IMG/VR virus record: IMGVR_UViG_3300027985_000843
Span: 62,001-126,000 of that record
Length of the DNA stretch: 64,000 nucleotides
Reading direction: 5' to 3' (one strand)
In this document: positions 2,032 to 42,178 of the stretch, piece by piece
How the letters are laid out: each line of letters opens with the position of its first letter
How positions within the stretch are numbered: position 1 is the stretch's first letter
The notes under the pieces: model-generated
The model's input: the letters and a program-made list of their open reading frames with translations, nothing else
Database searches by the model: none
What the model was told of the DNA's origin: nothing
Translations under genes and position numbers: made by a program

Positions 2032-3153
2032 TCACACGGTCGGCTCAAACCGAACCATGACCTCGGGTGGGATGGGCATACCCAGCACGTAGTGGGCGAA
2101 CGTCTCAGCGAAGTCCTCCCCCACGCCCGTCTTGGCGTACTGACTCACCGTGACGGTGTTGTTGTCCCCGATGAACACGTACTTCCGACCGGGCCGAACG
2201 AAGTTCCGTTCGAGCCACATCTCCCCTCGCTTGTATGCTGCGGTAGCATCCTTCTGCGACATCCCCGAGCCTGAGAAGGTATCCTTGAAGTATTCGATCA
2301 AGGGGACGTTCGGGTCCTTGAGGAACCCCACGGCCTTCGCAGGAGAGAAGTCCCCTCGAACAAGAGCCTGCCACATGTCCTGACGCGCCTCAAGAGTGAT
2401 ACCCTCTCCCTTGGAGTAGTTGTCCTCGTAGGCGTCTCTCTGGGGCCCTGAGAGCTTCTTGTGCCAGTAGCGGTGTCCAAGCTCGTGGACGAAGGTGTGG
2501 ACGTCGCTGAAGCGGAACCTAGCCTCCGCATTGAGCAAGACTATGTCGGGCGACTCCTTGTACATGCCCGCCCAGCTCTTCCGGCCCTTGTCCTCGGACC
2601 CACCGACGAGATAGACATCCCCGTACAGAATGCTACCGAAGCCCTTGGACTGTATCTTGCTCGAAGCGTCATCCAACAGCTTCATGGCCTCCGCATACTC
2701 TTCCGGGCGGTAGCCGAACTTGTTGATGATCTTGAACGGCCCGTGCTGGAAGTCCTTCTCGACCGTCCGATACGAGTCGAGGCGGTCCTGGACCCTCACG
2801 AGGGACTTGAGGGAATCCTCGATGCTTTCGAGCTGGATCGAAATCCAGGAAACAGCATCTTGTGTGGGGCCGCTCAGGTTCTTCTCAGCGAACGGATACT
2901 TGAGACGATGCAACCACTGAAGGACGCTCTTCATCTTCCGTTGCTCGTCCTTGCGCTCGAATCGAACACCATCGAGCATGGTCGCAAGAGGGCTCAGCTG
3001 CTCGCCCATCTTCCGGAACAGTTCGACGGCCCCCTCGGGGTCCTCTCGCAACTTCCGCTCGATCTGCGGGGCCATCTTCCGGAACAGCTGGACGTAGTCC
3101 TTGACCTTCGCGGCCAGGATGTATCGAGCTACGACCTTTCGGACGTCCGTCAT
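2032..3153 (-). CDS. Zincin-like metallopeptidase domain protein with N-terminal KVVARY motif
   Basis: HELGH (2473..2487) and downstream YAKT..GEDFAE (EDFAE at 2104..2118). ATG 3153 overlaps the upstream TGA (ATGA). Confidence 0.8.
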   Translation of the reverse strand: MTDVRKVVARYILAAKVKDYVQLFRKMAPQIERKLREDPEGAVELFRKMGEQLSPLATMLDGVRFERKDEQRKMKSVLQWLHRLKYPFAEKNLSGPTQDAVSWISIQLESIEDSLKSLVRVQDRLDSYRTVEKDFQHGPFKIINKFGYRPEEYAEAMKLLDDASSKIQSKGFGSILYGDVYLVGGSEDKGRKSWAGMYKESPDIVLLNAEARFRFSDVHTFVHELGHRYWHKKLSGPQRDAYEDNYSKGEGITLEARQDMWQALVRGDFSPAKAVGFLKDPNVPLIEYFKDTFSGSGMSQKDATAAYKRGEMWLERNFVRPGRKYVFIGDNNTVTVSQYAKTGVGEDFAETFAHYVLGMPIPPEVMVRFEPTV

Positions 3154-6100
3154 CGCTGGCCCCTGTTCGCCAAGTAGCGGGCGATGACGCGAGCCATCCG
3201 GATCTCTCCCGGGATGGTCACGTTGAGCCACTTGCGAATTTGGGGGAGGACCGTTCGAGGGCCGTAGGCGACCAGCATGCCGACAGCCTCACAGAACGCC
3301 TCCTCAGAGTTCTTGTTGGCGTACCCTGTGATGGGGTTGTTGGGGGTAGGCATTGTCGTGGTGCCCTCTTCCAACAGATCCTCGAAGTCTTGCTTCTTGG
3401 CAAGCTCTCGGTGGCGGCCGGCGTAGCCGGGCCACACAGCGTCGAGCTGGAGAGACAGAACGGGGTCCTTGTCCGCCAGGTACTCGGCGAACTCGTAGGA
3501 CCACATGTCCCCGGGCCACTTCGCGAGAAGCTCCCGGATGTCGAGGTCACCGTAATCCCCGTAGATGGCCTCCGACCAATAGTCCTTGGCTCCCCCGCCC
3601 AACAACTTCCACAGGTGGTGGCCCATCTCATGGGCCATCGTCTTGACGAGCTTGTCAGGGTTGCTGCTGACAGCTGCGGAGGCGTAGATCGTGATGGTCC
3701 CGTCGTGGTTGTATCGACCGCCTTCCCCGATCGTGGCTTCGAACTCGAAGATCATCGGGAGCTGATTCTTTGCCATCCACGGCATCCGCTCTGCGGACCT
3801 CTTGCGGAACAGCTTGAGGGCCTCCTTGAGCATCGCCATCTCTTCGGCGTTGTAGCGATCGTTCTGCTTGTAACCCCGGACTTCGATCCTGAAGCCCTCC
3901 AAGATGACTTGCTCTCGACCTGGAACCTCAGCCTGCAACGTCGCGGGCTCGTCGGGGTCCTTGTATCGGCGGTTGTTCGGGTCTTCATAGTAGTCGATGG
4001 CCTCCCGCACCGCTTTCCAGAACACCTGAGCCTTCCGCCTGATTCGCTTCTCCCACGCCTTGACATCCTGCTGGTACCGGCTGAATCGAACCGTCTCAGG
4101 CATGAAGTCCGTAGCCCTGTCGATGGGCAAGTCGGCTTCGATGTAGAAGTCCCATCCGGACTTGCGAAGCATGTAGTCGATGTTCTTGCGGACGTTTTCC
4201 TTGATCCGCTCATCGTACTTGAGCGACTTGTTCAAGAAGCGCTCGAACATCAGGTCGGCGAACCGCTTGCCCCACACATTGAAGGCTTCCTTGAGCCGGA
4301 TGGCCGTATCATAGTCCTTGACGCGAGGGACGTTCTTCATGAGGGTGAGGAAGTCAGCCCTCATCTTGTCGACCCATGGTTGATCGATCTGGACCAGCTC
4401 GGTTGCGTATCGAGCCACAACACGATTGACGAGGGAGGCCGCGAACGGAACCGGCTCGTAGTCCTCATCGGGGGTTACTTTGCAAGTCGGGCACGCCTGG
4501 CACACGTCGTCAGCCCGCTCTTTGAGCTGCTTGAGTCTACGCTTCTCCTTGGTCGCCCGTTCCTGTTCCTTGTACCAAGCATCCTCGTACTTGTCTTGGC
4601 CGGTCTCACACTTGCGCTCCAACCGTATTTGCTTCTGACGCTCACGCTCCATTTGGGCGATCTCTCGATCGGCGTTTTCCTGGAGCCACGCGTCATTCTC
4701 GTAGGGATGCTCCTCGATGTACTCCATGAACTGCTCGGCCCGTTCATCGGGGGTGCCTTTGAACTGGTTTTTGAGCTTGTTCCACAGGCCGTGATACTCG
4801 GACGGAATATTGTACTGTGCCCGCTCGTCTCGTTCCCTCCGACGTTCCCAGCCCCTCTGTTGTGGCGACAGCGCAATCCGGTCGGCCGACTTGTCCAGCC
4901 GATGCATGACCGTGCCGTCTTTCATGTACGTGTCTTCGAGGCCCGGGACAAGGTACTGACTCCGAAGCGTGGAAGCCTCGTGCCCGACAGCGGCAGCCGT
5001 TTCCTCCAGGGCCTTCTTGAACTCCTCCTTGAGGACGGCCTGCCGTTCCTTCGCGTCCGTGGGGAGCTTGCCCTTGCGGACAGCCTTGAGGCGCCGCTTC
5101 ATTTCCTCGTTGGCGTGCAGTCCCCGGATGTCTTTCGCCGTGATGTCGAACTTCTGAAGGTACGCATTGATCTTGGTCGCGTCGATCTTGCCTGTGTCAT
5201 GGCAGAACAGGCAGTCTTCGCCTTCCACGGCCTCGTAGGCATCCCGCAACGCCTTGACCAACGCTGCGCTGCTGACCGTTTTCTTCTGCTTGACGCCGGA
5301 CTTGCCAACGTAGGTGACCGTCGCCTTGCCTCGACCGAAGCTGACGTGATTCTTTTGCCAGCCGGTGACCCCGAAGTGACCATCCTTCGCTGAAGTGTCG
5401 TTGCCAACCCGCTCATACGTCTCGTCGATCAGCCCCACGGCCAGTGCCGTGAGGAACTTGTTCGGGTCGGAGGACTTGAGGTCCTTCGCCACCTGGGCCC
5501 GCAAGCCGTCGATGCTCTTGCGGAGCTTCTCGACGCGCTTCGCCTTCTCTCGGTTGCGGTGTTGGACCTGCCCTTCACTGTACTCGTAGACGGTCGTGGT
5601 TCCCTCACCGTCCTGCTTCGGAACCTGCTTCTTGTTCTTGTATCGAGCCGCCGTCCGCTTCTCCCGCTCGACCGGCTTGCCGTCGATGAGAATCTCGTGC
5701 GTCCGGTCAGCCCCATCGCCATCGACACCCGCGATGGCTTCACCGTCGACGTCGATGGAGGTCGAGTGGCCCACATCCCCAAGATACTTGATCTCGGCAA
5801 GCACCTTCTCGATGGCCTTGAGAGTGTCGCCCTCCACATCCACCTCGATAGTGTGGCGAGCCGCTTCCAGGTACCGGGCCACCACGCGTGTGGGGCCGTC
5901 TCCCCCGGGCCCATTCTCCCCGCACTCCCCCGTCTCGGGGCAGCGGTAGGCATCCCGGCCGTCGTCATAGATGGGCTCAGAGGGGCACTCAAGCAGGTCA
6001 GGGCCCGTTTGGCTAGGCAGGTCCCACAGGTGAGCCGCGACGACCCTGGTGGCCCCTCCTAGGGCCTCCAGGGCCGAGGTCACGCCGGGGATGACATCCA

Positions 6101-6425
6101 TGGCCGAGACCTCGCGAATGGGGACCCACTGATACTCGGACGATTCGTAGTTGAGCGTGGGCTCACCCTCCGAGTCGAACGTGTGGAAGTAGGTGACCGT
6201 CGCCGTGGGCATGTTGAGCGTGATGACCTTGGTCAGGTAGTTGACTGCGAGCCCCGCCTCTTCTTGCGTCTCCCGGATGGCCGCCTCCACCACGGCCTCG
6301 TCATCTTCGACACCACCCGTCGGGAAGTTCCACTTGCCGGGCATCCACGGAGCCGTAGGGCCTCGCTTGAGCAGCAGGACAGAGTCGCCTCGTTGAATGA
6401 TGGTGGCTGCAACGGTCTTGGTCAT
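3150..6425 (-). CDS. Multidomain fusion (1091 aa): Nudix hydrolase + unknown domain + DNA topoisomerase IB core + coiled coil + zincin metallopeptidase
   Basis: Nudix box GGVEDDEAVVEAAIRETQEEAGL; Topo IB motifs ERVGN, GKSG, AKDIR, VGH, SQYL; HEMGH (3618..3632) and YANKNSEEAFCE. ATG 6425 in ATGA overlap. Confidence 0.85.
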   Translation of the reverse strand: MTKTVAATIIQRGDSVLLLKRGPTAPWMPGKWNFPTGGVEDDEAVVEAAIRETQEEAGLAVNYLTKVITLNMPTATVTYFHTFDSEGEPTLNYESSEYQWVPIREVSAMDVIPGVTSALEALGGATRVVAAHLWDLPSQTGPDLLECPSEPIYDDGRDAYRCPETGECGENGPGGDGPTRVVARYLEAARHTIEVDVEGDTLKAIEKVLAEIKYLGDVGHSTSIDVDGEAIAGVDGDGADRTHEILIDGKPVEREKRTAARYKNKKQVPKQDGEGTTTVYEYSEGQVQHRNREKAKRVEKLRKSIDGLRAQVAKDLKSSDPNKFLTALAVGLIDETYERVGNDTSAKDGHFGVTGWQKNHVSFGRGKATVTYVGKSGVKQKKTVSSAALVKALRDAYEAVEGEDCLFCHDTGKIDATKINAYLQKFDITAKDIRGLHANEEMKRRLKAVRKGKLPTDAKERQAVLKEEFKKALEETAAAVGHEASTLRSQYLVPGLEDTYMKDGTVMHRLDKSADRIALSPQQRGWERRRERDERAQYNIPSEYHGLWNKLKNQFKGTPDERAEQFMEYIEEHPYENDAWLQENADREIAQMERERQKQIRLERKCETGQDKYEDAWYKEQERATKEKRRLKQLKERADDVCQACPTCKVTPDEDYEPVPFAASLVNRVVARYATELVQIDQPWVDKMRADFLTLMKNVPRVKDYDTAIRLKEAFNVWGKRFADLMFERFLNKSLKYDERIKENVRKNIDYMLRKSGWDFYIEADLPIDRATDFMPETVRFSRYQQDVKAWEKRIRRKAQVFWKAVREAIDYYEDPNNRRYKDPDEPATLQAEVPGREQVILEGFRIEVRGYKQNDRYNAEEMAMLKEALKLFRKRSAERMPWMAKNQLPMIFEFEATIGEGGRYNHDGTITIYASAAVSSNPDKLVKTMAHEMGHHLWKLLGGGAKDYWSEAIYGDYGDLDIRELLAKWPGDMWSYEFAEYLADKDPVLSLQLDAVWPGYAGRHRELAKKQDFEDLLEEGTTTMPTPNNPITGYANKNSEEAFCEAVGMLVAYGPRTVLPQIRKWLNVTIPGEIRMARVIARYLANRGQR

Positions 6426-7786
6426 TGTGCTTTTCCGTGAAGGTAGCGGTGCACCACCTGGAAGGCCAGCTTGGAGACAGGCTTGCCGCCAAATCCCGAG
6501 AGCCACAAGGTGCGACGCATCCGGTACAGAGCGTTGGGCGGCAACTTCTCTGGTGAAACCATGAACAAGACGAAGGTGTCGGCGAAGTCCTCTTTCTCGT
6601 CCGTGGTTCCATATTCGGTCGGAATCTGCAATTGCTCGTAGAGAGCCTTCAGAGCTTCCCCTACCTCAGGGTTCTCCCGCCGAAGAAGGTTGACCGTGTC
6701 GGGGGCGATGCGGAGTCCTGAGGAGTACCCCAGGCCCAAGATCTTCTTCTTGTGAGCAACCACCCTCTCCACTGTGCGATCGAAGTCAGGATCGTCTGGG
6801 GAATAGCCGTAGTTCGTTTTTACATAGAGCTGTGGATTCCGGATGACGTCGAAGAGTTGCTGCCCTCGCTTGGTGAGCCGAAATTGATTCGCCGCGATGA
6901 GCGGGTCACCCATCCCAGGGTCTCGAAGCCAGTAGGCAAATTTGACTTTGTCGAGCCCCTTGAGGCGGCGGGCCGTCTTGGCGGGGTTGAAGTCGTCTTT
7001 TTCGAGCAACGCGTAGTAGCGTTCCAGTTCGTTGGGCTTGATCTGATCCAACAAGCTTCGTGTGTCGTGGATGGGGTCCCAAGCACCGTCCCAGAACTCT
7101 CGGGCTTCTCCCTTGATGTAGGTCATGTGCACGAAGTGACCGAACTCGTGCATGAACGACCCCATAATCCACGATCCTGTTCCGAGCATCCGGTGGGGAC
7201 CGTCCTCGGTGAACATGGTCTTGCCCAACACGATGGTTTGCGCGTGCGAAACGTAAAGAGCGCCAGCATCATCCGTGTCCTGAAGGACAACTTTCTTGAC
7301 TCCTTCCTGGAGGAGTTCCGGCACACCGCGCTTCTTGAAGGTAGCCCGCAGAAAGTCGATCGCATCAAACAGCTTTTGCAGCCGCTTGGGCCCAAGACGG
7401 AACTGATCCGTGACTGGAAAGCCCTTGTACTGGAACTGGGCCGGCCCGATCTGGCCCAAGAACTGTTGGAGGGTCTGCTCGAACCGGTCGAGTTGGCCCA
7501 ACAGCTCCTGGTAGTCCTCCGGTTTTTGGTTGTCTGACAACGCCAAGAGAACGGGGCCTCTCGGCCGCATCGCGTCCAGAGTGGCCTCAGCGTCTCCACC
7601 GAAAGCCAGCAAAACCCAGTCAATGAAGCCCTTTTGCGTTGTGAGCATCAGGGCGTTGGGGGCGAACGTGTAGCGATCGAACACGTCCTTAGCCTGAGGA
7701 GTACCGAGGCGCACGGCCCGCACTTCTTGGGCAGCCCTCTGGAATGCTTCCAGATCCTTCTTGGCCTCTTCCCACTCTCGGGTCAT
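6422..7786 (-). CDS. Zincin-like metallopeptidase domain protein with C-terminal QVVHRYL motif
   Basis: GALY..., HEFGH (7136..7150), YGTTDEKEDFADTF. Confidence 0.8.
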   Translation of the reverse strand: MTREWEEAKKDLEAFQRAAQEVRAVRLGTPQAKDVFDRYTFAPNALMLTTQKGFIDWVLLAFGGDAEATLDAMRPRGPVLLALSDNQKPEDYQELLGQLDRFEQTLQQFLGQIGPAQFQYKGFPVTDQFRLGPKRLQKLFDAIDFLRATFKKRGVPELLQEGVKKVVLQDTDDAGALYVSHAQTIVLGKTMFTEDGPHRMLGTGSWIMGSFMHEFGHFVHMTYIKGEAREFWDGAWDPIHDTRSLLDQIKPNELERYYALLEKDDFNPAKTARRLKGLDKVKFAYWLRDPGMGDPLIAANQFRLTKRGQQLFDVIRNPQLYVKTNYGYSPDDPDFDRTVERVVAHKKKILGLGYSSGLRIAPDTVNLLRRENPEVGEALKALYEQLQIPTEYGTTDEKEDFADTFVLFMVSPEKLPPNALYRMRRTLWLSGFGGKPVSKLAFQVVHRYLHGKAQ

Positions 7787-8205
7787 CGTGCCGCCGCTCC
7801 TGCCACTTGGGCGAGGTTCTTGCCCATCGCCACGCGGGCCTTCTCTTTGGCGTACTGCTCCTGGCGGGCAGTTGCCTTGATCCGCAAGGTCTGTAAGTCC
7901 TTGCCCCGTTGGGTACCGAAAGGCGTGACGCTAATACCACGGTACGGCTTCTTTTCCTCCTGGAACGCGTCGTAGTCTCGCTGGTACCGCGCACTCAGCT
8001 CCTCAGCCTCTTGGCGGAGAGACTCCAAGCTCTTTGGGTCCGTTCCCGTACCCCAGCACTGAACACACAGGTGTTTGACTTGAGCCGTCTTCTCCACGTG
8101 GACACCCTCTCCCCCACAATGCTTGCAAGGGTCCAGCCGCACAGGAGGAACATTGAGCATTCGGGCCGCGTACCGGGCCACTACTCGGAAGAGAAGGTCA
8201 TGCAT
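7783..8205 (-). CDS. DnaJ-type zinc-finger plus coiled-coil protein with N-terminal RVVARY motif
   Basis: CKHCGGEG and CVQCWGTG (CxxCxGxG). ATG 8205 preceded by GGGAAGGTG. Confidence 0.7.
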   Translation of the reverse strand: MHDLLFRVVARYAARMLNVPPVRLDPCKHCGGEGVHVEKTAQVKHLCVQCWGTGTDPKSLESLRQEAEELSARYQRDYDAFQEEKKPYRGISVTPFGTQRGKDLQTLRIKATARQEQYAKEKARVAMGKNLAQVAGAAAR

Positions 8206-8219
8206 CACCTTCCCTGACG

Positions 8220-8264: not shown

Positions 8265-9272
8265 TCACTGAAGAAGGCGCCACTTCAGATAGCGAAGACG
8301 ATCCCTGATCGACAGCTTGCTGCCGTACTTCTTGCCCGTCAGCTCATAGTGTTCGACCACTCGACGAATCAGCGTGTGGGGCTGAGGGTCTTTGGGGTCG
8401 AGCTTGCCGGCGAAGCCCGCTGCCTTCGTGTGGCCTCCCCCGCCGTGGACCTTGGCGAAGCTGGCACAGTCGAAGAACGTGTGGCTGCGAGTCGAAAAGA
8501 CGATCGAGGGCTCCCCGTCGATCATGAAGATGTTGAAGCCGACCAGCAGGTCCACGTTGGTGTCCAGATACTCGGCCGTGTCGCTGGTCAGCTTGACTCC
8601 CTCGATGACCGCAACGCGAGTGCCGCTGGACGTAGTGAACCGCCACGCATCGTCGCCCTTCTTCTTCGCTGTCTTGAGCTTGCGTTCGAGAAGGATGGGG
8701 CCGATCTCCAGCTTGGCGTCCAGATCGCGCAAGGACTTGTGCGAATCCCACGGCCAGAAGTCGATGGCCTCGGAGACCTCTCGGGCCTCGTGCCATCTCT
8801 CGTGCTTGTTCTGCCAAGTGTCTCTGATGCCGATGAGGGTTGCGAAGTCTTGGATCTTGTCGATGTCGGGGGTGTTGGGAACCGTCTTGCCGTAGCTCTC
8901 CATGAGCGGCTTGAAGACCTCTCTGAACACGAGCAGGGCCCCGCATACGCCTGGATCTTTCTTCTCGTCGCCGAAGACGCCGTTCTCGCCGAAGGCTTCC
9001 ACGACTCCCTGTTGTGTCTTGTGGTGGTCCAGCACGACAGCCCCCATGCCGATGAAGTCGTCGACCTGATCCTCGTGTGGAGAGAAGTCCGCGAAGATGG
9101 TGCCGGGTTCCACCGGTAGCGTCTGATGTTGCCTCGTCTTGTACTGCACGAAGGACACCTTCGCGTTCGGCAGGCAGTGCTTCAGCAGAAGCGCACTCGC
9201 GGTGCCGTCGGAGCAGTTGTCGTGGACCACGATGTGGTTGATGTGGCTAATCTTGTCGAGCGGGATAGGCAT
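8265..9272 (-). CDS. DHH/DHHA1 family phosphoesterase (NrnA/NrnB-like)
   Basis: HDNCSDG, DFS, LDHH, GGGGHTKAAGF motifs. Confidence 0.9.
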   Translation of the reverse strand: MPIPLDKISHINHIVVHDNCSDGTASALLLKHCLPNAKVSFVQYKTRQHQTLPVEPGTIFADFSPHEDQVDDFIGMGAVVLDHHKTQQGVVEAFGENGVFGDEKKDPGVCGALLVFREVFKPLMESYGKTVPNTPDIDKIQDFATLIGIRDTWQNKHERWHEAREVSEAIDFWPWDSHKSLRDLDAKLEIGPILLERKLKTAKKKGDDAWRFTTSSGTRVAVIEGVKLTSDTAEYLDTNVDLLVGFNIFMIDGEPSIVFSTRSHTFFDCASFAKVHGGGGHTKAAGFAGKLDPKDPQPHTLIRRVVEHYELTGKKYGSKLSIRDRLRYLKWRLLQ

Positions 9273-15118: not shown

Positions 15119-16396
15119 CTACCCTTGAGAAGCCACTCGCTTCTCGGTGGCCTCACCGCCACCCTTGTACTTGATGATGGGGGGCTGCTTGTCCGTGACG
15201 GTGTCCTTCGTCACGGTGATGGATTCCACGTTGGATCGTTTGCCTGCATACTCGAAGGTGAGCGGGATCGTGATGTCCTCCACCACGCTTCGCAAGGCCC
15301 GCGCCCCCGTGGGCTTGCTCATCACCTTCCGCGCGATGGCTTGCAGAGCCTCTTCCTCGAACGTCAGCTGGATACCGTCCATGCTGAACAGGGCGATCAA
15401 CTGTTTGATCAAGGCGTGCTTTGGCTGAGTGAGGATCTGGACGAGCTGCTCTTCCGTGAGGGGGAGAGTCGTGGTCATGATGGGCAGGCGCCCCTTCAAT
15501 TCGGGGATGATTCCGAATTCCAGGATGTCGTCCTCTTCCGCCAACTCGTAGACGTCTGTCTTCGTGAGTTCACGCTTCGCCTGTGCGACGCCGAACCCCA
15601 TTTTGCTGCCCTTGTTTATCCGCTGTTTGACGATGTCATCCAAACCACCCTCGAAGGACCCGAGGCAGATGAACAGGACGTTGGAGGTATCGAACATCGT
15701 GGTCGGCTGGTCGACGGACACCATGCGGGAGGTCCCGAGCGGGAGGTTGACCCTGCTCCCCTCGACCAGCTTGAGCAACGCCTGTTGAACGCCTTCCCCG
15801 GTAACGTCACGGAATCCAGAAGCTCCGCGCCCCGACTTGCGGGCAATCTTGTCGATCTCATCGATGACACACACACCCCACTGAGCCTTCTCGGTGTCAC
15901 CGCCGGCCGCCGCGACGAGCCCTTGAAGGATGGACTCGACGTCATCCCCGACGTAGCCCGTTTGGGTGAGCTTGTTGGCATCGGCGACATGCATGGGCAC
16001 GCCTAGCATGTCGGTGAAAGCACGGATGACCTCCGTCTTTCCCGAACCCGATGGGCCCAGGATCAGGATGTTGCTCTTGTCTATCCGAACATGGTCCCCG
16101 CCGCCTCCCTGCCGGAAATACTCTCGGCGAAGATAGTGCCGGTACACAGCCACGGCGACGTCTCGCTTGAGTTTTTCCTGACCGATGACATGCTCGTCGA
16201 GGAATGCTTTGATCTCTTTCGGCGGGAGGAGAGGCTTCTCGGCTTCCTCGTGCACGTGCTCCTTCGCGTCCTTGTACAACGTCTCGTGCACCAAGTCGCT
16301 GCACCGGTTGCAGATGAAGGGGCCGCCCTCGTTGCCAATGAGGGTCTTGACTTCGTTTTCGGGTCGCTTGCAAAAACTGCACTGTCGCTTGGGCAT
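15119..16396 (-). CDS. clpX: ATP-dependent Clp protease ATP-binding subunit ClpX
   Basis: N-terminal CSFC..ICNRC zinc domain, GPSGSGKT, GYVG, IDEIDKI, GEGVQQALLK, GARALR. ATG 16396. Confidence 0.95.
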   Translation of the reverse strand: MPKRQCSFCKRPENEVKTLIGNEGGPFICNRCSDLVHETLYKDAKEHVHEEAEKPLLPPKEIKAFLDEHVIGQEKLKRDVAVAVYRHYLRREYFRQGGGGDHVRIDKSNILILGPSGSGKTEVIRAFTDMLGVPMHVADANKLTQTGYVGDDVESILQGLVAAAGGDTEKAQWGVCVIDEIDKIARKSGRGASGFRDVTGEGVQQALLKLVEGSRVNLPLGTSRMVSVDQPTTMFDTSNVLFICLGSFEGGLDDIVKQRINKGSKMGFGVAQAKRELTKTDVYELAEEDDILEFGIIPELKGRLPIMTTTLPLTEEQLVQILTQPKHALIKQLIALFSMDGIQLTFEEEALQAIARKVMSKPTGARALRSVVEDITIPLTFEYAGKRSNVESITVTKDTVTDKQPPIIKYKGGGEATEKRVASQG

Positions 16397-16398
16397 GC

Positions 16399-16629
16399 CT
16401 AGCCTATACACCGATCGCAGGCGGAAAGCTTCAAATCCTCTATCTTTTCGCCTGTATGACAAGGACACACCAGCACGTATTCCTTCTGCCACGAACCCGA
16501 AGCGATCCGCCAACCCTCGGCCTGAAGGACCTTCTTGGCCTCACCGAAGGTATCGGAGTCAGTTTCGAAGTAGAGGGGCTGAAGGTATTGGCAGCCTTCG
16601 ACGTCGCACACGGCATTGAAGAAAATCAC
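16399..16629 (-). CDS. Small Cys-rich protein
   Basis: GTG 16629 overlaps the nitrilase stop (GTGA); CDVEGC..CPC..CDRC. Confidence 0.6.
   Translation of the reverse strand: MIFFNAVCDVEGCQYLQPLYFETDSDTFGEAKKVLQAEGWRIASGSWQKEYVLVCPCHTGEKIEDLKLSACDRCIG
16407..16412 (-). promoter_or_regulatory. Class A motif (CGGTG-TATAGG)
   Basis: 10 nt upstream of clpX ATG 16396. Confidence 0.7.
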
Positions 16630-17372
16630 GGCACTTCCGCGTACACGATGCAGGGAGCGGACCACGCGAGTCCCTCACAAGTCACCTTGTTGTTCGGACT
16701 GATGATGCAGCTGCCACCCTCTCCGAAGTCGTTGTTGGCCTCTCGACCGTAACGGTTGGCGACCACGAGCCACGTCTTGTTGCTCTCGGCGAACTCGATC
16801 CAACGGTTGGCGGGGAAGCCCCCGTTACCCCAGTTGGTCGAGAAGGCCACGATGTCGGCGTCTCCCGGCTCGTAGAAGTCGTCCATCCCTGGGCCCTTGT
16901 CTCGGACGTCACGACAGATGAGCAGGCCCACCTGATGGCCGTACAGCCCGACTATGGGCGGGCTGTCCTTGCCCGCCTCAGCCCACAAGAAGTCCTGGCC
17001 CCAGCGGTTGACCTTTCGGTAGGTCGAGTAGTTCCCGTTCGGCAACACGATGGCCTGACTGTTGTACAGCCGAAACAACCGGTCGGGAACGGAATCGTCT
17101 GCGACACGCTCAGCAAACCCCCACACGATGGCAACGCCGTGCTGAACAGCTAGCTCCTGGAACAATCGGAACGTCTCCCCCTCCCCTACCGTTTCAGACA
17201 GGGGGAACGCTTCGTGGAAGCCCATCATGCTGTAGCCCGACAAGCACAGTTCGGGCAACACGATGAGTTTGGCCCCCTGCTGGATAGCCACCAGGATCAT
17301 CCGGACTGCGGTGTCACGGTTGATGGCAGGCTGACTGTACTCGGGTCGGAATTGGACAGCGGCGACCTTCAT
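16626..17372 (-). CDS. Carbon-nitrogen hydrolase (nitrilase/amidase superfamily)
   Basis: MKVAAVQF start; catalytic E (LPEL), K (YRKVN), C (LICRD). Confidence 0.9.
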   Translation of the reverse strand: MKVAAVQFRPEYSQPAINRDTAVRMILVAIQQGAKLIVLPELCLSGYSMMGFHEAFPLSETVGEGETFRLFQELAVQHGVAIVWGFAERVADDSVPDRLFRLYNSQAIVLPNGNYSTYRKVNRWGQDFLWAEAGKDSPPIVGLYGHQVGLLICRDVRDKGPGMDDFYEPGDADIVAFSTNWGNGGFPANRWIEFAESNKTWLVVANRYGREANNDFGEGGSCIISPNNKVTCEGLAWSAPCIVYAEVP

Positions 17373-17959
17373 GACACGTCCCTGGGCATTGCCCCGTCGA
17401 GGGGAATGAGGCGGTCGGCGACCCTCCAGTGAGGAGTGCCCCACCGGGACTGGGCCTGACGCATGCTAGCTGCCACGAGAGTGTCGCGGATGTTCTGCGG
17501 AACCTCCACGTCAAACTCGTGCTCGATCCACGACAGTTCTCGGGAGACAGTGGTGGTCACAGACGGGAACTTCTCAATGAGGGCCCTCGTGTCCCTCACA
17601 TGCTCCGGCGTCAAGGCATCCGGCCCAAATCGAGAGACTCTCCAGATGGGCCGAATGACGATGCCGTTCAAGTCCAACCGGGCCGCCCTCTTCGTGGGAA
17701 AGTAGGGCAGGATGGTGAAGGTCCACAAGTTCCAGCCAAGCCCCGACGACGCAAGCACAAGGTTGTGTGGCTTGAGCCACCAGCCCGTTGAACCGAGAGG
17801 GTCCAGCCCCTCGATCTTCGAGGCCGTCTTGCTGAGCGTTTGGGTTCCAAGAGCTTCCATGACCTGCATGGTCTTGGCTGCCAAGTCATACTCCCCGAGG
17901 GAAGCCATCACCTTGGCTGTCTCTTGAATCTCCGCGTAGACTTGCTTCAAAGTCATCAT
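17369..17959 (-). CDS. Hypothetical protein
   Basis: Long ORF in gene-dense array, preceded by a class B motif. Confidence 0.7.
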   Translation of the reverse strand: MMTLKQVYAEIQETAKVMASLGEYDLAAKTMQVMEALGTQTLSKTASKIEGLDPLGSTGWWLKPHNLVLASSGLGWNLWTFTILPYFPTKRAARLDLNGIVIRPIWRVSRFGPDALTPEHVRDTRALIEKFPSVTTTVSRELSWIEHEFDVEVPQNIRDTLVAASMRQAQSRWGTPHWRVADRLIPLDGAMPRDVS

Positions 17960-34000: not shown

Positions 34001-34534
34001 CTATCTTACTTCGCACGTACCGGGAGGTGCCGGATCGGGCACACCATCCCACCAAGTGCTCACGAGCTTCGCCACCCCCTTTGTCTCCACAGCAAAGACA
34101 ATCGTGAGCCGGGACGGGGTCGTGTAGCGAATCTTTTGCCCCTGTTCGATCATGGCCGACAACACGCCATAGAAGGGGTCGTTCCTCTTGCGAAGGGCGT
34201 GTGCCTCCTTGGCCCATTCGACGAAGGCTTTCTGCACGTCTTTGACGGAGACTTTGCGAAGATCCATCCGGTATTGAGCGTGCGGGCCGATGAGCACCTT
34301 GGTGACGATGCTCTTGGTCTTCTCCACTTGCAGGTCGTAGACCTTGGCCGCGTCAGGATTGGACAAGGGCTTGCCGTTCTCGACCTGCTCGACCAGCTTG
34401 TCCTTGAGGCGCGGGTTCTGGATCTCTTGATCCACTCGCTGGACCACCTGGCAAGGGCCTCCTGGCCGCCCAAGAGGCGGGTTCAGGTCGGCAAGGAATC
34501 TCCGAACGACACCTTCTGCGGTTGCATGCGTCAT
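34001..34534 (-). CDS. DUF4258/RelE-like fold protein with N-terminal VVRRFL motif
   Basis: HAQYRMDLRKVS..DV ... LTIVF...KLVSTWW; ATGA overlap. Confidence 0.6.
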   Translation of the reverse strand: MTHATAEGVVRRFLADLNPPLGRPGGPCQVVQRVDQEIQNPRLKDKLVEQVENGKPLSNPDAAKVYDLQVEKTKSIVTKVLIGPHAQYRMDLRKVSVKDVQKAFVEWAKEAHALRKRNDPFYGVLSAMIEQGQKIRYTTPSRLTIVFAVETKGVAKLVSTWWDGVPDPAPPGTCEVR

Positions 34535-35142
34535 GGGTTCCAGAAGCTGAAGGTCAGCGAGAAGTTCCAGTTGTGGTGCCAGCTGCCCCACGTCAAACCG
34601 TAGCCGCTGTAGGCCCCGAAGTTCTCCGTGAGGTCGATGCCCACCCCACCACCGATGCTGCGGTAGCCCAGGGCGGCATTGAGGTTGACCCAGTCGTAGT
34701 ACAGGAAGTCGGCCATGAAGCCCGCATCCGTCACATCGCGGAACTCTTGCGAGTCCCCATAGAGGGCTTCCAAGGGCAGCAACCCCATGTACGCCTTCGG
34801 CCGGAAGCGGAAGCCCCAGATCGGCGGCTTGTGCATCGCGGCGATCACGTGGACCTCACCCTCAGCCTTGACTTCGTAGTTGCACCAGGTCATCCGCAGA
34901 GTGTAGGGCTCCGGAGCATTCCCCGTGAAGAAGACTCGGCCGTCCCTGTCCACGACAATCCGGATGGGGTCCAGCTCGAACGTTGGCTTCTCGTCGAGCT
35001 GGCACTGCTTCTCCCGAAGCAACGTGGCGAAGACACGCATGTCCTTCTCGGGCACGCACATCGACGGCTCCGCACACTCTTGAGCCGACGCCACCGACGA
35101 CAATAGCAGGACCGCCAGAACGAACAGCCACCGGTGCATCAC
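34531..35142 (-). CDS. Secreted or outer-membrane protein (signal peptide, aromatic beta-strand C-terminus)
   Basis: MMHRWLFVLAVLLLSSVASA|QE signal; alternating strands ending NWNFSLTFSFWNP. Confidence 0.65.
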   Translation of the reverse strand: MMHRWLFVLAVLLLSSVASAQECAEPSMCVPEKDMRVFATLLREKQCQLDEKPTFELDPIRIVVDRDGRVFFTGNAPEPYTLRMTWCNYEVKAEGEVHVIAAMHKPPIWGFRFRPKAYMGLLPLEALYGDSQEFRDVTDAGFMADFLYYDWVNLNAALGYRSIGGGVGIDLTENFGAYSGYGLTWGSWHHNWNFSLTFSFWNP

Positions 35143-35888
35143 TGTCTCCTCTCCAGACGAGCTTTCAGCTCACGGGTGGCCGCCGCCAGCTCCTTGAGGT
35201 TCTGCGTCGAGCTGGGGCTGCCTTCGCCCGTGTTGATCCAGTTCCAGAAGTCGGGCGTCTCACACAGCTCGCACGAGGTCCCGGACTCCTTCCAGTCTTT
35301 CGACCCCCGCTCGTAACCCCACCCGAGCCCATAGTGGTGGGCAAGGGAGTTCATACACGCCTCACAGGCCGTAGCAGCCACGAGAATCGAGTCTTCAACC
35401 GACAGGGGCCGGAGGACCTTGCCATGCCTCAAGGCCGCTTCCTGGACCTCCTGGGACGACGGGCGAGCCATTGCGAGAGCGAGGTCTGTCGGCCAAGTCG
35501 ACTCGCCCGACAGGAGTGTGTAACTGCCGCTCGAATCCCACTTGTCCGGCCAAGGCTCGCCGATGTTCCGAACTTGTGTCCCTTTGCAACGTGCGCACTC
35601 CCGACCCTCTACCCCCTCGACCCACCCGTAAGTCTTGCGAAGGTCCTCTTCCGGATGAGGGCAGGTCGCAACCTCTTCGGGCAGAATCGTCCGAAGGATG
35701 GAATGCCGAAGGGACGCAGGCATCCGGTCGTGCTGGTAGATGTACCCAGGGGGAGGGACATGCCCGTCGCCGGTGCTGAAGTCGGGAATCCACCGCTCGC
35801 CCGCCTCGTTCTCGAACCACAGGGACGGGAGCAGCTGGAACCTCTGAGCGAGGCGGTAGCGAAAGACGATGCGAGCTGCGAGGTTCAT
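35139..35888 (-). CDS. Cys-rich hypothetical protein with N-terminal RIVFRY motif
   Basis: ATG 35888 in ATGA overlap; CPH, CARC, CEAC, CELC. Confidence 0.7.
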   Translation of the reverse strand: MNLAARIVFRYRLAQRFQLLPSLWFENEAGERWIPDFSTGDGHVPPPGYIYQHDRMPASLRHSILRTILPEEVATCPHPEEDLRKTYGWVEGVEGRECARCKGTQVRNIGEPWPDKWDSSGSYTLLSGESTWPTDLALAMARPSSQEVQEAALRHGKVLRPLSVEDSILVAATACEACMNSLAHHYGLGWGYERGSKDWKESGTSCELCETPDFWNWINTGEGSPSSTQNLKELAAATRELKARLERRQ

Positions 35889-36643
35889 AGAGAGCCCTCG
35901 ATGTCTGTCTGTTTGCGTTGCCAATACGCCTTAACACCGCGTGCAATACTGGCCTTGTGCTCTTCAGACAGTTCGCTCGGACCTTTACCCTTACGGCCTC
36001 TAGAGATTCGGGCCAGGGTTTCCGGAGTTCTCTTTCGACCCCTGTTTGCCGCAGCCACCTTTTCTACATGTTCAGGGGATAACTTCCGACCCACGCGAGC
36101 CGCAGCCATTTTGGCTTTGGTCTCCTCGGACAAGGGTTTTCCTTTGAGTGCTTCGGACACCTTTCTTCCGACCTCCGGATCTCTTTTCTTGCCCTTTTTG
36201 GCCTGAGACATTTTAGCTCTGGTCTCTGGGGATAGCTTCCTCCCTCTCAAGGCAGCGGCTACTTTGGCAACAGCTTCTGGCGACTTTTTTCGTCCTTTCA
36301 TGACTTTGGATAGCTTTTCCTTAGTCTCAGAACTCAGGGATTTACCACCCAAGCCCCCACTATCCAAGTTGTAGCCACGTGTCAGGTCGGTTGAGCTGTA
36401 GTGCTTGATCCAACGACGCTCTGCACAAAGGGCGTCGTCCTCTGTGTCGAATTCTTCCAGCACTTCCACCACGAAATTGTCGATGCCGTGCTTTCTCATG
36501 GCTCTGACAATCAACATATGGTGATGACTTCTTTTGGAAGCACTCACGTGCTGAGCCCATCGATGGCTCATATGGTTGGTCTTGCCCACATAGACCTTAC
36601 CATTCACAAGATTCTTGATGAGGTACACGCACGGCCGTTTCAT
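35885..36643 (-). mobile_element. Free-standing GIY-YIG homing endonuclease with tandem NUMOD3 repeats
   Basis: VYLIKN..NGKVYVGKT, R...H, E, GYNL..GG; about eight 17-aa K(L/R)S.E...K.S.A..G repeats; lower GC (31/60 in line 36241). Confidence 0.9.
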
Positions 36644-40800: not shown

Positions 40801-42178
40801 ACGCAGAGATCTTGTCCTGATACGACACGAACGGGCCTTGGGGTCCAGCACCCGACCGCTTCCACGTGCCTCGCAACTCGCCTCTGAGCAGCTTGTCGAG
40901 ACCCTGGTACAGCATCGAGTTGTAGTCGAACCCGTTCGGGTTGACTGTGTGGCGCAGGTCGAGGATGTCCGTCTTGACGATTTGGTCGCTGTACAGCTCG
41001 TCGGGCCGACCCGACAACACAGCGATCGTCGCCCCCGCCTTGTGGACTTCGGCCTTCGTGCCGAGGTACCCACGGTTGGTCAGAGTCATGGTCGTACCGG
41101 TGATCACCGAGTAGGTCATGATCTCATCGTCGACCTTGATCACGACGGAGGAAGCCGGGGTGAGAGGAAGCGGGATGCCCGTGGCCGACACAAGTGTGAG
41201 CGACACATCGGCCGCAGTGATATTCGCCGCCAGGGTCGGGGTGGCCGTGAAGGTTGTCGCCCCTGTTCTGTCAGTCGCAGTGGGGTTACGATTGAACCCA
41301 CCATTGAGGTTCTGACCAGGGTCGCCGTCCCATGCCACGCTGTTGCGCCGGAACACGGCACACAGGGGGATTGCGTAGACGTAGCCGTCCACGGTCCCCA
41401 GAGCGTTGTCGGTCCCGTCGCCGGCCCTCCAGAGCCCCGCATCGCCCAATTCCTGACGCATGTTGGTGAAGGTGTAACTTGTGTCGGCAGCAGCCGCGCC
41501 ACGAGCCTTGACCACCGTCGGATCGAACCCGTCTGGATAGGAGGTGAGGCCCACGAGGCCACTCACCACTCGGATGCGGTATTGCAGTTGCACTCGCTGG
41601 GCCGTCTCGATGCCCAGAGCAGGGTCCTTCATGTCGTCGGCCAAGTAGGTGTAGCCACCCTCGACGTTGCCGTACCGATAGACGGTGGCCGCCCCCGGCT
41701 TGTTGGTCAGGCTGGGGTTGGGGGCGAGCTTTGCCTGCCACACCTCAAGGAAGGCAAAGTCAATCCGGCTGTCCCCCGAGTTCGAGGGAGGCGGGTCGAG
41801 CTTGATCTTGTTCCACGTGTCCGCATCATTGGGGCTGCCCGGAGGGGTGCCCGTGCCGGTGCCCGTAACGGGGATCAACCAGCCATTGACACACGCCCAC
41901 TGGACAGCCATGACCTCGCCAGTCTTTTGTTGACCGAATCGGAACCAGTTGGACCATGACGCGCTCGTGAGGTAGTCGTCCCCTGAGTTGGTCACGTTCG
42001 ACAACCAACCCGAAGGCGTTCCTCGCAAGGTCAGAATCCGACGCCAGTCGTCGGTAAGCTGTTGCAAGAAGTTGAACTCAGCGTCCATCGGGGGCTTTCC
42101 CTGTTGCAGGATGACCTGCACCATGGCCGCTTGATTGGGGTTGAGAACCCGCGAGACGCCTGTTCCAAAGTTCGTCAT
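37874..42178 (-). CDS. Large virion structural protein (baseplate/tail-associated), paralogue of 44832..47396
   Basis: 1434 aa, G/T/D-rich beta composition; N-terminal blocks shared with the 854-aa protein. Confidence 0.75.
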   Translation of the reverse strand: MTNFGTGVSRVLNPNQAAMVQVILQQGKPPMDAEFNFLQQLTDDWRRILTLRGTPSGWLSNVTNSGDDYLTSASWSNWFRFGQQKTGEVMAVQWACVNGWLIPVTGTGTGTPPGSPNDADTWNKIKLDPPPSNSGDSRIDFAFLEVWQAKLAPNPSLTNKPGAATVYRYGNVEGGYTYLADDMKDPALGIETAQRVQLQYRIRVVSGLVGLTSYPDGFDPTVVKARGAAAADTSYTFTNMRQELGDAGLWRAGDGTDNALGTVDGYVYAIPLCAVFRRNSVAWDGDPGQNLNGGFNRNPTATDRTGATTFTATPTLAANITAADVSLTLVSATGIPLPLTPASSVVIKVDDEIMTYSVITGTTMTLTNRGYLGTKAEVHKAGATIAVLSGRPDELYSDQIVKTDILDLRHTVNPNGFDYNSMLYQGLDKLLRGELRGTWKRSGAGPQGPFVSYQDKISASAPALGVTLLDAPDGYRTVYSDAAMIQSMEFIATPGTGSGTPITTSWSLGLTGVHTNQGGGIGVFDAGDILTIPIAQLKNSLPAADADQVQFLSNAGAVSIRVDGMATPMVEGVDFTVTPITGPNDDLVITLLNIDPSPTDRHLIITFHVMWGPGRGISRRPDLIHSVSYLSGSTEILLPQIGVPADNTPLSTAWAPLWSKYRDSVYNNLLPVTASAYVDPGSKTVILTPFRRIVLPQTFQTLDGANINWNTDTVVMTYADGTTNGTTAFNSASANFLASILQGDVIVIDTGAATGFYYVSSVSDAHNLVLDRTAPAAVSTFTVYHTQGLMPLNDISGAAKWATTDPLELFAGETDPDTNTNNICMPMPRKLIPGWGAVHAPIIHTDNTVWDEGVNFMVLTTKGDKTTGPASEKNFVPFENGSLSYAVFSTADLNTYPAPAAATYNAQLTYSGITYAGMRQYTETRALGREGLEMPPFYGIARLFAVYEAEDYSDNGSNYDATTRQYVGGGAANLLRQNFNGPVFWIEIDDDGDSTFILNAEAIDITKSPNLISSFAAGHYVIEANIFGFDRGSFDLNSDFRFVLTRERLETKSATRTNNYGPISQAETSTPNLVIPAPAINSDEIAVNYSRTPYQGDAWGSQTLQQDIQHKQGPLLTSTLYQLLSTELNEAALTRPNQKALEVLASRSFLTTLGTGRLSGDLSPSATSLDFRNVGYEDWTNPITSALDPRPTLALAALDSTHAGAIGTAYHGCIERLPLGAGLLDKDFKGDFIGGVSSQVPTPFMYTDSYGPGILPSSIAVNSSYEAAGLLVGTSSLSSGQPGEVVVHVDGEQGNYGLLVNFRTNRGGSGFTAFPPHPGGEFAMQFQTAGTSPSFSTVLAGSAYLVRNTVTNIGSTEVSAGGELMLLVVTSGTQLKTGTTRNIVIQSGTNGTGETVSAVDLYRLPGHPLVSDNVRFDVDPTSIDLAKKTPLSMD

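What the first reader, a model, noticed from the sequence alone, without database searches (positions are those of the whole stretch)
2032..8205. Recurrent 'RVVARY(L)' peptide tag on unrelated proteins and at polyprotein domain junctions: candidate virion-cargo targeting or cleavage system
Seen: exact VVARY occurs four times in unrelated sequence contexts (3121..3138 KVVARYIL, 4407..4424, 5868..5888, 8170..8187). Variants occur at 3171..3191 (RVIARYL), 5640..5657 (RTAARY), 6027..6047 (RVVAAHL) and 6440..6460 (QVVHRYL). All four genes of this operon carry it, always near the N-terminus, the C-terminus or a domain junction. Codons differ between copies (AAG GTC GTA GCT CGA TAC; CGT GTT GTG GCT CGA TAC; CGC GTG GTG GCC CGG TAC; CGA GTA GTG GCC CGG TAC), so it is conserved as peptide, not as a DNA repeat. 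I did not find it in the replication or tail proteins. Known: T4 internal proteins use an N-terminal capsid-targeting sequence, and jumbo-phage head proteins are processed by prohead proteases at short motifs. Inference: an amphipathic helical tag that directs packaging into the head or maturation cleavage, letting the phage load and swap enzymatic effectors for injection.
Basis: partly seen in the sequence, partly recalled or inferred. Interest (0 to 1): 0.9.

Follow-up and report, generated by a model that had tools for sequence, protein, structure and literature searches.

The report
Portable terminal peptide tag, jumbo phage
A short, conserved helical peptide (R-V-V-x-R-Y/F-L-x-A) is stuck onto the ends or domain junctions of many unrelated proteins of an uncultivated 372-kb phage and its relatives, and the comparative evidence best fits an address label that loads enzymes into the phage head, although nothing here proves it.

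Summary
VVARY occurs four times in the six-frame translation, all in one tightly coupled four-gene operon (expected 0.018). The window is part of a 371,739-bp phage-G-like jumbo phage contig. Orthologues down to 35-45% identity keep the peptide at the same N- or C-termini. About 25 BLAST-unrelated protein families in 94 related loci carry it at an end (37 N-terminal and 14 C-terminal hits, against 4 and 4 for the reversed pattern). AlphaFold models it as a low-confidence helix detached from the fold.

In a sister clade the same attachment point on the zincin orthologue carries a different 25-residue peptide. That peptide resembles the C-terminal tail of that clade's prohead protease. The large protein encoded between portal and protease carries the motif in 19 of 29 orthologues. 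In several relatives the tagged genes lie inside the head module.

My best reading (about 0.5) is a prohead-docking, cargo-loading tag on a polyvalent NUDIX-topoisomerase IB-zincin protein and its neighbours. Cleavage at the motif is unsupported.

- Three carriers are distant zincin paralogues, not unrelated proteins.
- RTAARY travels with the topoisomerase module.
- RVVAAHL and the DHH copy are weak.

I rate it a new variant of a known kind.

The parts
7783..8208 (-). ORF4, 140-141 aa, a small protein made of tag, Zn-ribbon (CxxC...CxxC) and long helices. The ATG at 8205 is the likely start.
   Evidence: weak DnaJ_CXXCXGXG match; 10 orthologues; tag residues R7 V8 R11 A13 A14 R15 at least 90% conserved; AF2: helix 2-15 at pLDDT 54-61, then a loop
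8170..8187 (-). Tag copy RVVARY, N-terminus of ORF4
6422..7786 (-). ORF3, 454 aa, zincin-like (HEFGH ... EDFADTF), distant paralogue of ORF1
   Evidence: no Pfam or PHROG family
6440..6460 (-). Tag variant QVVHRYL, 6 residues from the C-terminus of ORF3
3150..6428 (-). ORF2, about 1091 aa counted from the ATG at 6428 (the longest ORF starts at 6506). It is a polyvalent protein: NUDIX, small domain, topoisomerase IB, charged/coiled region, zincin-like domain (HEMGH).
   Evidence: NUDIX 3e-17, Topoisom_I 1.5e-22; zincin, hhalign E 5e-6; the modules are separate genes in L002, L004, L006
6027..6047 (-). Weak tag-like RVVAAHL just after the NUDIX domain (uncertain)
   Evidence: lacks the R and Y/F of the consensus (PSSM)
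5868..5888 (-). Tag copy RVVARYL at an inter-domain linker of ORF2
   Evidence: (18.2 bits)
5640..5657 (-). RTAARY, an element immediately N-terminal to the topoisomerase IB module. Orthologues have KVAARY, RVAARY, RVVAKY or NVAAKY at the same junction.
4407..4424 (-). Tag copy RVVARY at the junction before the zincin domain. It corresponds to the N-terminal tag of the stand-alone zincin genes in L002, L004 and L006.
3171..3191 (-). Tag copy RVIARYL, 6 residues from the C-terminus of ORF2
   Evidence: A-type tag in window/L002/L004; B-type tag at the same point in L010/L011
2032..3153 (-). ORF1, 373 aa, zincin-like (HELGH ... EDFAETF) with an N-terminal tag
   Evidence: 23 homologues, all metagenomic; AF2 mean pLDDT 88; residues 1-13 below 50; no significant PDB match
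3121..3138 (-). Tag copy KVVARY, residues 6-11 of ORF1
8346..8363 (-). Tag-like RVVEHY near the C-terminus of the DHH phosphoesterase gene 8265-9272 (uncertain)
   Evidence: phrog_4771; 9.1 bits; orthologues in L003/L006 lack it
35856..35873 (-). Tag copy RIVFRY, 6 residues after an internal Met (MNLAARIVFRY...) of ORF 35139-35924. Function unknown.
34496..34513 (-). Tag variant GVVRRF, N-terminal (MTHATAEGVVRRFLADL) of ORF 34001-34534. Function unknown.
   Evidence: (12.5 bits)

Best explanation
The motif is a portable docking peptide about 10 residues long: an amphipathic basic helix with consensus [R/K/N]-V-[V/A/L]-x-R-[Y/F/W]-h-x-A. It has been appended to N-termini, C-termini or inter-domain linkers of many different proteins in a lineage of phage-G-like jumbo phages. 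All copies would be read by one common receptor.

The most likely receptor is a component of the assembling prohead: scaffold or core, the inner capsid surface, or the site used by the prohead protease tail. On that reading the tagged enzymes are enclosed in the head and leave with the DNA. In this window they are a NUDIX-topoisomerase IB-zincin polyvalent protein, two further zincin-like proteins, a Zn-ribbon protein and two unknowns.

Shown: the tag is real, conserved, portable, swappable and structurally detached. Inferred: the receptor is in the prohead, the cargo is ejected, and the enzymes act early in infection.
For: (1) Non-random occurrence in the window.
(2) Conservation in orthologues. 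In the ORF1 family (23 sequences) RV[VA]xRY sits 4-8 residues after Met in most members, and when an extra N-domain is present the tag sits behind it. In the ORF4 family the tag is among the most conserved columns down to 42% identity.
(3) Portability. Over 1202 unique ORFs from 94 loci there were 37 N-terminal, 14 C-terminal and 55 interior matches, against 4, 4 and 13 for the reversed pattern. The carriers fall into about 25 BLAST-unrelated clusters. They include DUF5662, 2H-SAK phosphoesterase, GNAT, zincins, NUDIX and topoisomerase IB. 2H, GNAT, NUDIX and zincin domains are typical of virion-delivered polyvalent proteins (PMC5512222).
(4) Modularity. Modules fused in ORF2 are separate genes with terminal tags in relatives. 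The zincin orthologue ends in the A-type tag in window/L002/L004, but in a different 25-residue peptide (LRSxxIRLAHxxPxLRPxLLPLLK) at the same point in L010/L011.
(5) Link to the head:
- In L012, L009, L008 and LR745208.1 the topoisomerase/zincin/tagged genes lie between the portal gene and the protease-scaffold-MCP genes.
- In L002/L005 they directly follow a head gene.
- In L028, L048 and L072, arrays of 2-4 tagged genes lie a few kb downstream of the MCP gene, directly after it in L028.
- 26 of 431 ORFs downstream of the head gene are tagged, against 3 of 355 upstream.
- The large conserved protein encoded between portal and protease carries the motif in 19 of 29 orthologues, 17 of them at aa 45-100 (reversed control 1 of 29). 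The window phage's own copy has RVVARF at aa 692-697.
- The window phage's head module also encodes a small basic protein starting MDDLARRVAIRY.
(6) Protease tail. In the complete 485-kb relative LR745208.1, a pattern built from the B-type tag hits 9 N-termini and, apart from those, only the C-terminal tail of the prohead protease. Shuffling predicts 0.4 hits per proteome. Prohead proteases are known to be targeted into proheads by their C-terminal region: SPN3US in PMC7411985; HK97, Duda et al. 2013, recalled from memory and cited in that paper.
(7) AlphaFold2 models the tag as a helix with the lowest confidence in the protein, separated from the core by a break. This is as expected for a peptide that folds on a partner.
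Against: - There is no virion proteomics, and no cultured phage carries this tag. The nearest cultured relatives are Tunturi_5 (MCP 49% identical) and phage G (39%). Tunturi_5 shows no such motif in the 41 kb examined around its head module; of the phage G proteins checked only gp13 has a tag-like stretch (TAARYAA), and phage G uses a different N-terminal peptide.
- In the window phage the operon lies about 125 kb from the head module (contig 64-70 kb versus 189-210 kb). It sits among nucleotide-metabolism and replication genes.
- The enrichment near head genes is modest: about 6% of ORFs there against about 2% elsewhere in the window. It lacks a proper genome-wide baseline for the A-type tag.
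- In the A-type clade the protease tail (..KGRLYxLG) resembles the tag only loosely.
- No receptor was identified and no cleavage site was seen.
- In LR745208.1 the B-tagged genes are scattered over the whole genome.
Confidence: 0.5

Rival explanations
1. The motif is the recognition or processing site of the co-encoded zincin-like metallopeptidases. These would cut the polyvalent protein at its junctions and trim the termini of partner proteins.
For: Three paralogous HExxH proteins lie in the same operon. Iyer et al. 2017 predict that zincin-like peptidases process polyvalent proteins. In ORF2 the motif sits at the domain junctions.
Against: Stand-alone proteins keep the motif only 4-10 residues from their ends, where cutting would release nothing useful. 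Many tagged genes in relatives are small proteins clustered by the capsid gene. No conserved scissile residue flanks the motif (PSSM). The interchangeable B-type peptide resembles the prohead protease tail, not a zincin substrate.
Confidence: 0.13
2. The tag tethers proteins to a different hub that is not the prohead. That hub could be a multi-enzyme complex of the operon's products, the membrane, or the replication or transcription machinery, giving co-localisation rather than packaging.
For: The operon is translationally coupled and lies next to DHH phosphoesterase, thymidylate synthase, AAA+ and replication genes. An amphipathic helix can bind many kinds of partner. Tagged genes are scattered over the genome of LR745208.1.
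Against: This does not explain the tag on the conserved portal-adjacent head-module protein, the position of tagged genes inside head modules, or the similarity to the protease tail. The strict sequence conservation argues against generic membrane binding.
Confidence: 0.15
3. The tag is a recognition or tethering signal for a ClpX-type unfoldase. The phage encodes one, and ClpX reads short peptides at protein ends. The result would be timed degradation or remodelling of the tagged enzymes.
For: Window 15119-16513 encodes a ClpX-like protein with the C4 zinc finger and AAA+ module. ClpX substrates and adaptors use short terminal peptides. From memory, the ClpX-binding tail of the adaptor SspB has an Arg-Val-Val core; this is a lead, not a test.
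Against: The complete relative LR745208.1 has both kinds of tag but no homologue of this ClpX. ClpX is not near tagged genes in any related locus. Internal copies and variable distance from the termini fit a degron poorly.
Confidence: 0.07
4. There is no common function. The similarity reflects shared ancestry of the zincin paralogues plus chance.
For: Three carriers are paralogues. Several listed variants are weak: RVVAAHL, the DHH copy and RTAARY.
Against: The paralogues carry the tag at different ends, outside the aligned core. Enrichment at termini is 9-fold (N-terminal) and 3.5-fold (C-terminal) over the reversed pattern, across about 25 unrelated families. The tag is conserved in orthologues.
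Confidence: 0.03

Closest known systems
Capsid targeting sequence of phage T4 internal proteins and Alt (Mullaney and Black 1996, as summarised in PMC7411985)
   Same: A short peptide on otherwise unrelated proteins, sufficient in T4 to load them into the prohead. The cargo leaves with the DNA.
   Different: The T4 signal is strictly N-terminal and is removed by the prohead protease at a defined site. Here the tag also occurs at C-termini and junctions, the sequence is unrelated, no cleavage site is evident, and the phage is of the HK97-fold, phage-G lineage.
C-terminal prohead-targeting region of prohead proteases (HK97 gp4, Duda et al. 2013, from memory; SPN3US gp245, PMC7411985)
   Same: A terminal segment outside the catalytic domain brings the protein into the prohead. 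In the sister clade the cargo tag and the protease tail match one pattern.
   Different: Those regions are known only for the protease itself, not as a signal shared with many other proteins. In the window's own clade the resemblance is loose.
Encapsulin cargo-loading peptides (review PMC7355545)
   Same: A short terminal peptide on diverse enzymes that docks on the inner face of an HK97-fold shell. It can sit at either end.
   Different: The shell here is a true phage capsid with portal, protease and scaffold-like genes. The capsid protein hits phage-capsid families, not encapsulin. The consensus is different.
Polyvalent proteins of phages and conjugative elements (Iyer et al. 2017, PMC5512222)
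   Same: ORF2 combines disparate enzymatic domains with a zincin-like peptidase in one polypeptide. Tagged proteins in relatives carry 2H-SAK, GNAT and NUDIX domains.
   Different: Classical examples are tied to the virion by MuF or portal fusions. Here no MuF domain was detected (Pfam), and a short peptide appears to take that role.
Encapsulation peptides of bacterial microcompartments (from memory)
   Same: An amphipathic helix at the N-terminus, C-terminus or between domains of unrelated enzymes, joined by a flexible linker.
   Different: A different shell type and no sequence relationship. This is a functional analogy only.

Membership tests
T4-type capsid targeting sequence | Short N-terminal peptide shared by otherwise unrelated head-internal proteins | tested here: inconclusive
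   The peptide is shared by unrelated proteins. It is N-terminal in most cases but also C-terminal and internal. Head-internal location is not shown.
T4-type capsid targeting sequence | Removed by the prohead protease at a conserved cleavage motif next to the signal | tested here: not met
   The PSSM of 48 instances shows no conserved residue beyond h-x-A after the aromatic position. There are no processing data.
T4-type capsid targeting sequence | Tagged proteins present in virions; tag sufficient for packaging | not testable with these tools
   The phage is uncultivated, and no cultured relative with the tag was found.
Polyvalent proteins (Iyer et al. 2017) | Two or more domains of disparate biochemical activity in one polypeptide | tested here: met
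   NUDIX plus topoisomerase IB plus a zincin-like domain in ORF2.
Polyvalent proteins (Iyer et al. 2017) | Zincin-like metallopeptidase domain predicted to process the polypeptide | tested here: met
   The domain is present: HEMGH and a downstream E-x-x-F-x-E element, homologous to the ORF1 family. Its processing role is not tested.
Polyvalent proteins (Iyer et al. 2017) | Encoded with, or fused to, virion packaging components (MuF, portal, late genes) | tested here: inconclusive
   Not met in the window, where the neighbours are nucleotide-metabolism genes. Met in relatives L012, L009, L008 and LR745208.1, where the orthologous genes lie between portal and protease.
Encapsulin cargo-loading peptide | Shell protein is an encapsulin with no portal or tail genes | tested here: not met
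   The head module has portal, prohead protease and a major head protein of phrog_2522, related to phage G gp27.
ClpX recognition or adaptor-tether peptides | Co-occurrence with the cognate ClpX | tested here: not met
   ClpX-like gene present in the window. It is absent from the complete tag-bearing genome LR745208.1 and from the fetched flanks of the zincin-related loci L002-L014. Host ClpX is not testable.

The most novel reading that the evidence does not exclude
Phage-G-like jumbo phages use a lineage-wide system of interchangeable 'zip-code' peptides, with at least two flavours that can replace each other at the same attachment point. One flavour is shared with the prohead protease tail. 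The peptides load arbitrary enzymes into the capsid for co-injection. If so, the injected enzyme repertoire of uncultivated huge phages could be read directly from genome sequence, and the tag could be reused to load foreign proteins.
Probability: 0.4. Interest if true: 0.8.

Novelty: new variant of a known kind. Interest (0 to 1): 0.66.

Why it matters
Huge phages carry hundreds of genes of unknown role, and almost none are cultured. A sequence-readable address label would have three uses:
- It would mark which of their enzymes travel inside the particle and act first in the host. Here these would be a NUDIX hydrolase, a type IB topoisomerase and zincin-like peptidases; in relatives, 2H phosphoesterase and GNAT.
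- It would show that head-loading signals can sit at either end of a protein and be swapped between clades.
- It would offer a compact tag for loading proteins into large HK97-fold capsids.

Even if the receptor is not the prohead, a conserved 10-residue peptide shared by about 25 protein families points to an unrecognised hub in this lineage. I found no description of it in the searchable literature.

Tried and rejected
- Megablast of the operon against 50,697 phage records gave no match.
- tblastn of ORF2 found only partial hits, to the topoisomerase in LR745208.1 and to NUDIX elsewhere.
- Pfam and PHROGs gave nothing for ORF3, most tagged proteins, the 965-aa head-module protein, the scaffold-like protein or the B-tagged proteins.
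- Foldseek of the ORF1 model against the PDB gave no significant match; the best E-value was 0.23, to assorted zincins.
- The head region of Tunturiibacter phage Tunturi_5 shows no tag.
- Phage G virion proteomics could not be linked to its own N-terminal peptide: the main texts do not list those proteins and no supplements are held. The HK97 protease paper is not held.
- I looked for a shared promoter-like motif upstream of the operon and of the head genes and saw nothing obvious.
- I looked for Y-versus-F co-variation between cargo tags and protease tails within the A-type clade and found none.
- The ClpX idea is weakened by the absence of ClpX in LR745208.1.


Full report
WHAT THE WINDOW IS. 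The window matches IMGVR_UViG_3300027985_000843 at 100% identity. That is a 371,739-bp viral contig, and the window corresponds to about contig 62-126 kb. Almost all genes are on the minus strand. PHROG and Pfam searches identify:
- a DHH phosphoesterase, a thymidylate synthase, two AAA+ proteins (one ClpX-like), a DNA polymerase, a DnaB-like helicase and an SNF2-type helicase;
- very large tail-fibre-like proteins from 37.8 kb onward.

The phage's head module lies elsewhere on the contig (locus L066, contig 189-210 kb). It contains portal, a 965-aa protein, a 235-aa protein, prohead protease, a 418-aa scaffold-like protein, a 207-aa protein and a 293-aa major head protein. The capsid protein is 83% identical to that of the uncultured 485-kb phage LR745208.1, 49% to Tunturiibacter phage Tunturi_5 and 39% to Bacillus phage G gp27. 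This is therefore a phage-G-like jumbo phage.

THE OBSERVATION. VVARY occurs four times in the six-frame translation, only in genes 2032-8208 on the minus strand.
- Shuffling gives 0.018 expected copies.
- A looser pattern gives 9 observed against 1.1 expected.
- The four genes overlap by ATGA at each junction, so they form a translationally coupled operon.
- Two more N-terminal copies lie at 35856-35873 and 34496-34513.

WHAT THE CARRIERS ARE.
- ORF2 is NUDIX (aa 31-133), then topoisomerase IB (aa 315-513), then a C-terminal HEMGH domain.
- ORF1 (HELGH) and ORF3 (HEFGH) share with that C-terminal domain a collinear HExxH and a downstream E-[DE]-F-x-[DE] element.
- ORF1 versus ORF3 gives BLAST E 0.001. 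The ORF1 family versus the ORF2 C-domain gives hhalign probability 86%, E 5e-6. These three are distant paralogues of a zincin-like family that has no Pfam model. An AlphaFold model of good confidence has no significant PDB neighbour.
- ORF4 is a small Zn-ribbon protein.
- ORF2 fits the polyvalent-protein class of Iyer et al. 2017: disparate enzymatic domains plus a zincin-like peptidase.

THE MOTIF IS A CONSERVED, PORTABLE TAG.
- In 23 homologues of ORF1, all metagenomic, RV[VA]xRY follows the initiator Met by 4-8 residues in most sequences. Where an extra N-terminal domain exists, the motif sits behind it.
- In the ORF4 family the tag columns are at least 90% conserved while overall identity falls to 42%.
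- In related loci the modules fused in ORF2 are separate genes that keep the motif at their ends. Stand-alone zincins in L002 and L004 have it at both ends, and L006 has four consecutive tagged genes.
- Over 1202 unique ORFs from 94 loci, the pattern [RKQN][VI][VALI]x[RK][YFW] occurs 37 times within 25 residues of the N-terminus, 14 times near the C-terminus and 55 times inside. The reversed pattern gives 4, 4 and 13.
- The terminal carriers form about 25 BLAST-unrelated clusters. Among them are DUF5662, a 2H-SAK phosphoesterase and a GNAT acetyltransferase.
- A PSSM from 48 instances extends the consensus to [R/N]-V-[V/A/L]-x-R-[Y/F/W]-h-x-A. On a helix this places the two arginines on one face and V, V/A/L, Y/F, h and A on the other.
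- AlphaFold2 models the tag as a helix of the lowest confidence in the protein, separated from the core by a break. In ORF1, residues 1-13 have pLDDT below 50 against a mean of 88. In ORF4, helix 2-15 has pLDDT 54-61.

TAG SWAPPING. More distant relatives (L008-L012 and LR745208.1) carry a second, longer peptide, LRSxxIRLAHxxPxLRPxLLPLLK, at the N-termini of several proteins.
- The zincin orthologues align up to the end of the catalytic domain. They then end either in the short tag (window, L002, L004) or in the long one (L010, L011), at the same attachment point.
- I fetched the complete 485-kb genome of LR745208.1 in pieces and called 675 ORFs. The long peptide occurs on nine proteins, always right after a Met, and these are scattered over the genome.
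- The only other match to the pattern is the C-terminal tail of the prohead protease. Shuffling predicts 0.4 matches per proteome. The same holds for L008.
- The short tag is also present there at five N-termini, including the two zincin homologues.

LINK TO THE HEAD.
- In L012, L009, L008 and LR745208.1 the topoisomerase, zincin and other tagged genes lie between the portal gene and the protease-scaffold-capsid genes.
- In L002/L005 they follow the 213-aa head gene directly.
- Sixty non-redundant loci were chosen only by that head gene. Seventeen of them have tagged genes, with 26 of 431 downstream ORFs tagged against 3 of 355 upstream.
- The 965-aa family encoded between portal and protease carries the strict motif in 19 of 29 orthologues, 17 of them at aa 45-100 (reversed control 1 of 29). 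The window phage's own copy has RVVARF at aa 692-697.
- The window phage's head module also encodes a small basic protein beginning MDDLARRVAIRY.
- Prohead proteases are brought into proheads by their C-terminal region: SPN3US in PMC7411985; HK97, recalled from memory. T4 loads internal proteins through a short N-terminal targeting sequence (PMC7411985).

MECHANISM PROPOSED. The tag is a docking helix that binds one receptor in the assembling prohead, possibly the site used by the protease tail. Any protein carrying it at an accessible end or linker would then be enclosed and later leave with the DNA. The polyvalent ORF2 would carry several copies.
- Shown: reality, conservation, portability, modular exchange and structural detachment of the tag.
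- Inferred: the identity of the receptor, packaging, ejection and early action.
- Cleavage at the motif has no support.

WEAKNESSES.
- There are no proteomic data, and no cultured phage with this tag was found.
- The window's operon is about 125 kb from the head genes and sits among nucleotide-metabolism genes.
- The enrichment near head genes is modest and has no full-genome baseline for the short tag.
- In the window's clade the protease tail resembles the tag only loosely.

RIVALS. The alternatives I kept are:
- a recognition site for the co-encoded zincins;
- tethering to another hub;
- a ClpX signal, weakened because LR745208.1 has tags but no such ClpX;
- chance plus paralogy, disfavoured.

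NOVELTY. Searches of the held literature found the T4, phiKZ/SPN3US and polyvalent-protein precedents. They found no description of this peptide or of terminal tags in phage-G-like phages. I rate it a new variant of a known kind (prohead or cargo targeting peptides), with function unproven.

Noticed in passing
L008-L012; LR745208.1 (L095, L097-L106): A second, nearly invariant 25-residue N-terminal leader, (M)TTLRSKLIRLAHxNPxLRPxLLPLLKEA, sits on nine otherwise unrelated proteins of one 485-kb genome. Similarity ends abruptly after it, as for a removable leader. None of the carriers has a Pfam family.
   Followed up: partly
L096 (Bacillus phage G, record 3.3-44 kb): Several phage G proteins around the portal, protease and capsid genes begin with another recurrent basic peptide, [K/S]-R-[L/I]-[I/K]-K-K: gp5, 9, 10, 13, 17, 20 and 38. 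gp13 continues with TAARYAA. This may be the equivalent tag in the cultured prototype.
   Followed up: partly
window 15119-16513 (-): A phage-encoded ClpX-like unfoldase with the C4 zinc finger, AAA_2 and D2-small domains. No ClpP-like gene is next to it; the upstream neighbour 16626-17444 is a carbon-nitrogen hydrolase.
   Followed up: partly
L002 1920-4703; also L005, L025, L035, L048, L052, L072: In several relatives the prohead protease gene is about 920-945 aa instead of about 490. In L002 it contains Hint/intein and LAGLIDADG matches, so it appears to be an intein-interrupted prohead protease.
   Followed up: no
L066 8650-9906 and orthologues: The scaffold-like protein has a highly conserved C-terminus, D-L-S-x-L-W-x-S-A-P-D-[VI]-S-x-x-F, in both clades. 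This is a likely capsid-binding end, and it is distinct from the cargo tag.
   Followed up: no
L066 1214-3046 and orthologues: The portal proteins end in a conserved ..[VI]-A-x-x-[LM]-[GS]-L..-G-R-F C-terminus. The first part loosely resembles the tag (ERVAKYMSL in the window phage).
   Followed up: no
window 7786-7830 (-), alignment A4: The ORF4 family has an almost invariant C-terminal end, ..GK-x-[LM]-A-[RKQ]-x-A-G-A-A-A-R. This may be a second terminal signal on the same small protein.
   Followed up: no
window 3150-6428 (-): A type IB topoisomerase fused to a zincin-like peptidase recalls the repair of topoisomerase-DNA adducts by SprT/Wss1-type metalloproteases. Iyer et al. 2021 (PMC7824862) note phage-specific topoisomerase I and 1-3 SprT-like peptidases in some jumbo phages.
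   Followed up: no
window 34001-35924 (-): Two tagged genes of unknown function flank a gene (34531-35142) whose product starts with a hydrophobic stretch resembling a signal peptide (read by eye, no predictor run). This is a second small tagged cluster, between the helicase and the tail genes.
   Followed up: no
window 37874-42178 and 44832-47396 (-): Two very large tail-fibre-like proteins share a 39% identical N-terminal region of about 300 residues, so they are paralogues.
   Followed up: no
L094 427-4515 (Tunturiibacter phage Tunturi_5 gp321): The nearest cultured relative encodes a 1362-aa protein annotated MutT/NUDIX hydrolase inside its structural module. It may be a counterpart of the tagged NUDIX polyvalent protein that uses another means of packaging.
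   Followed up: no
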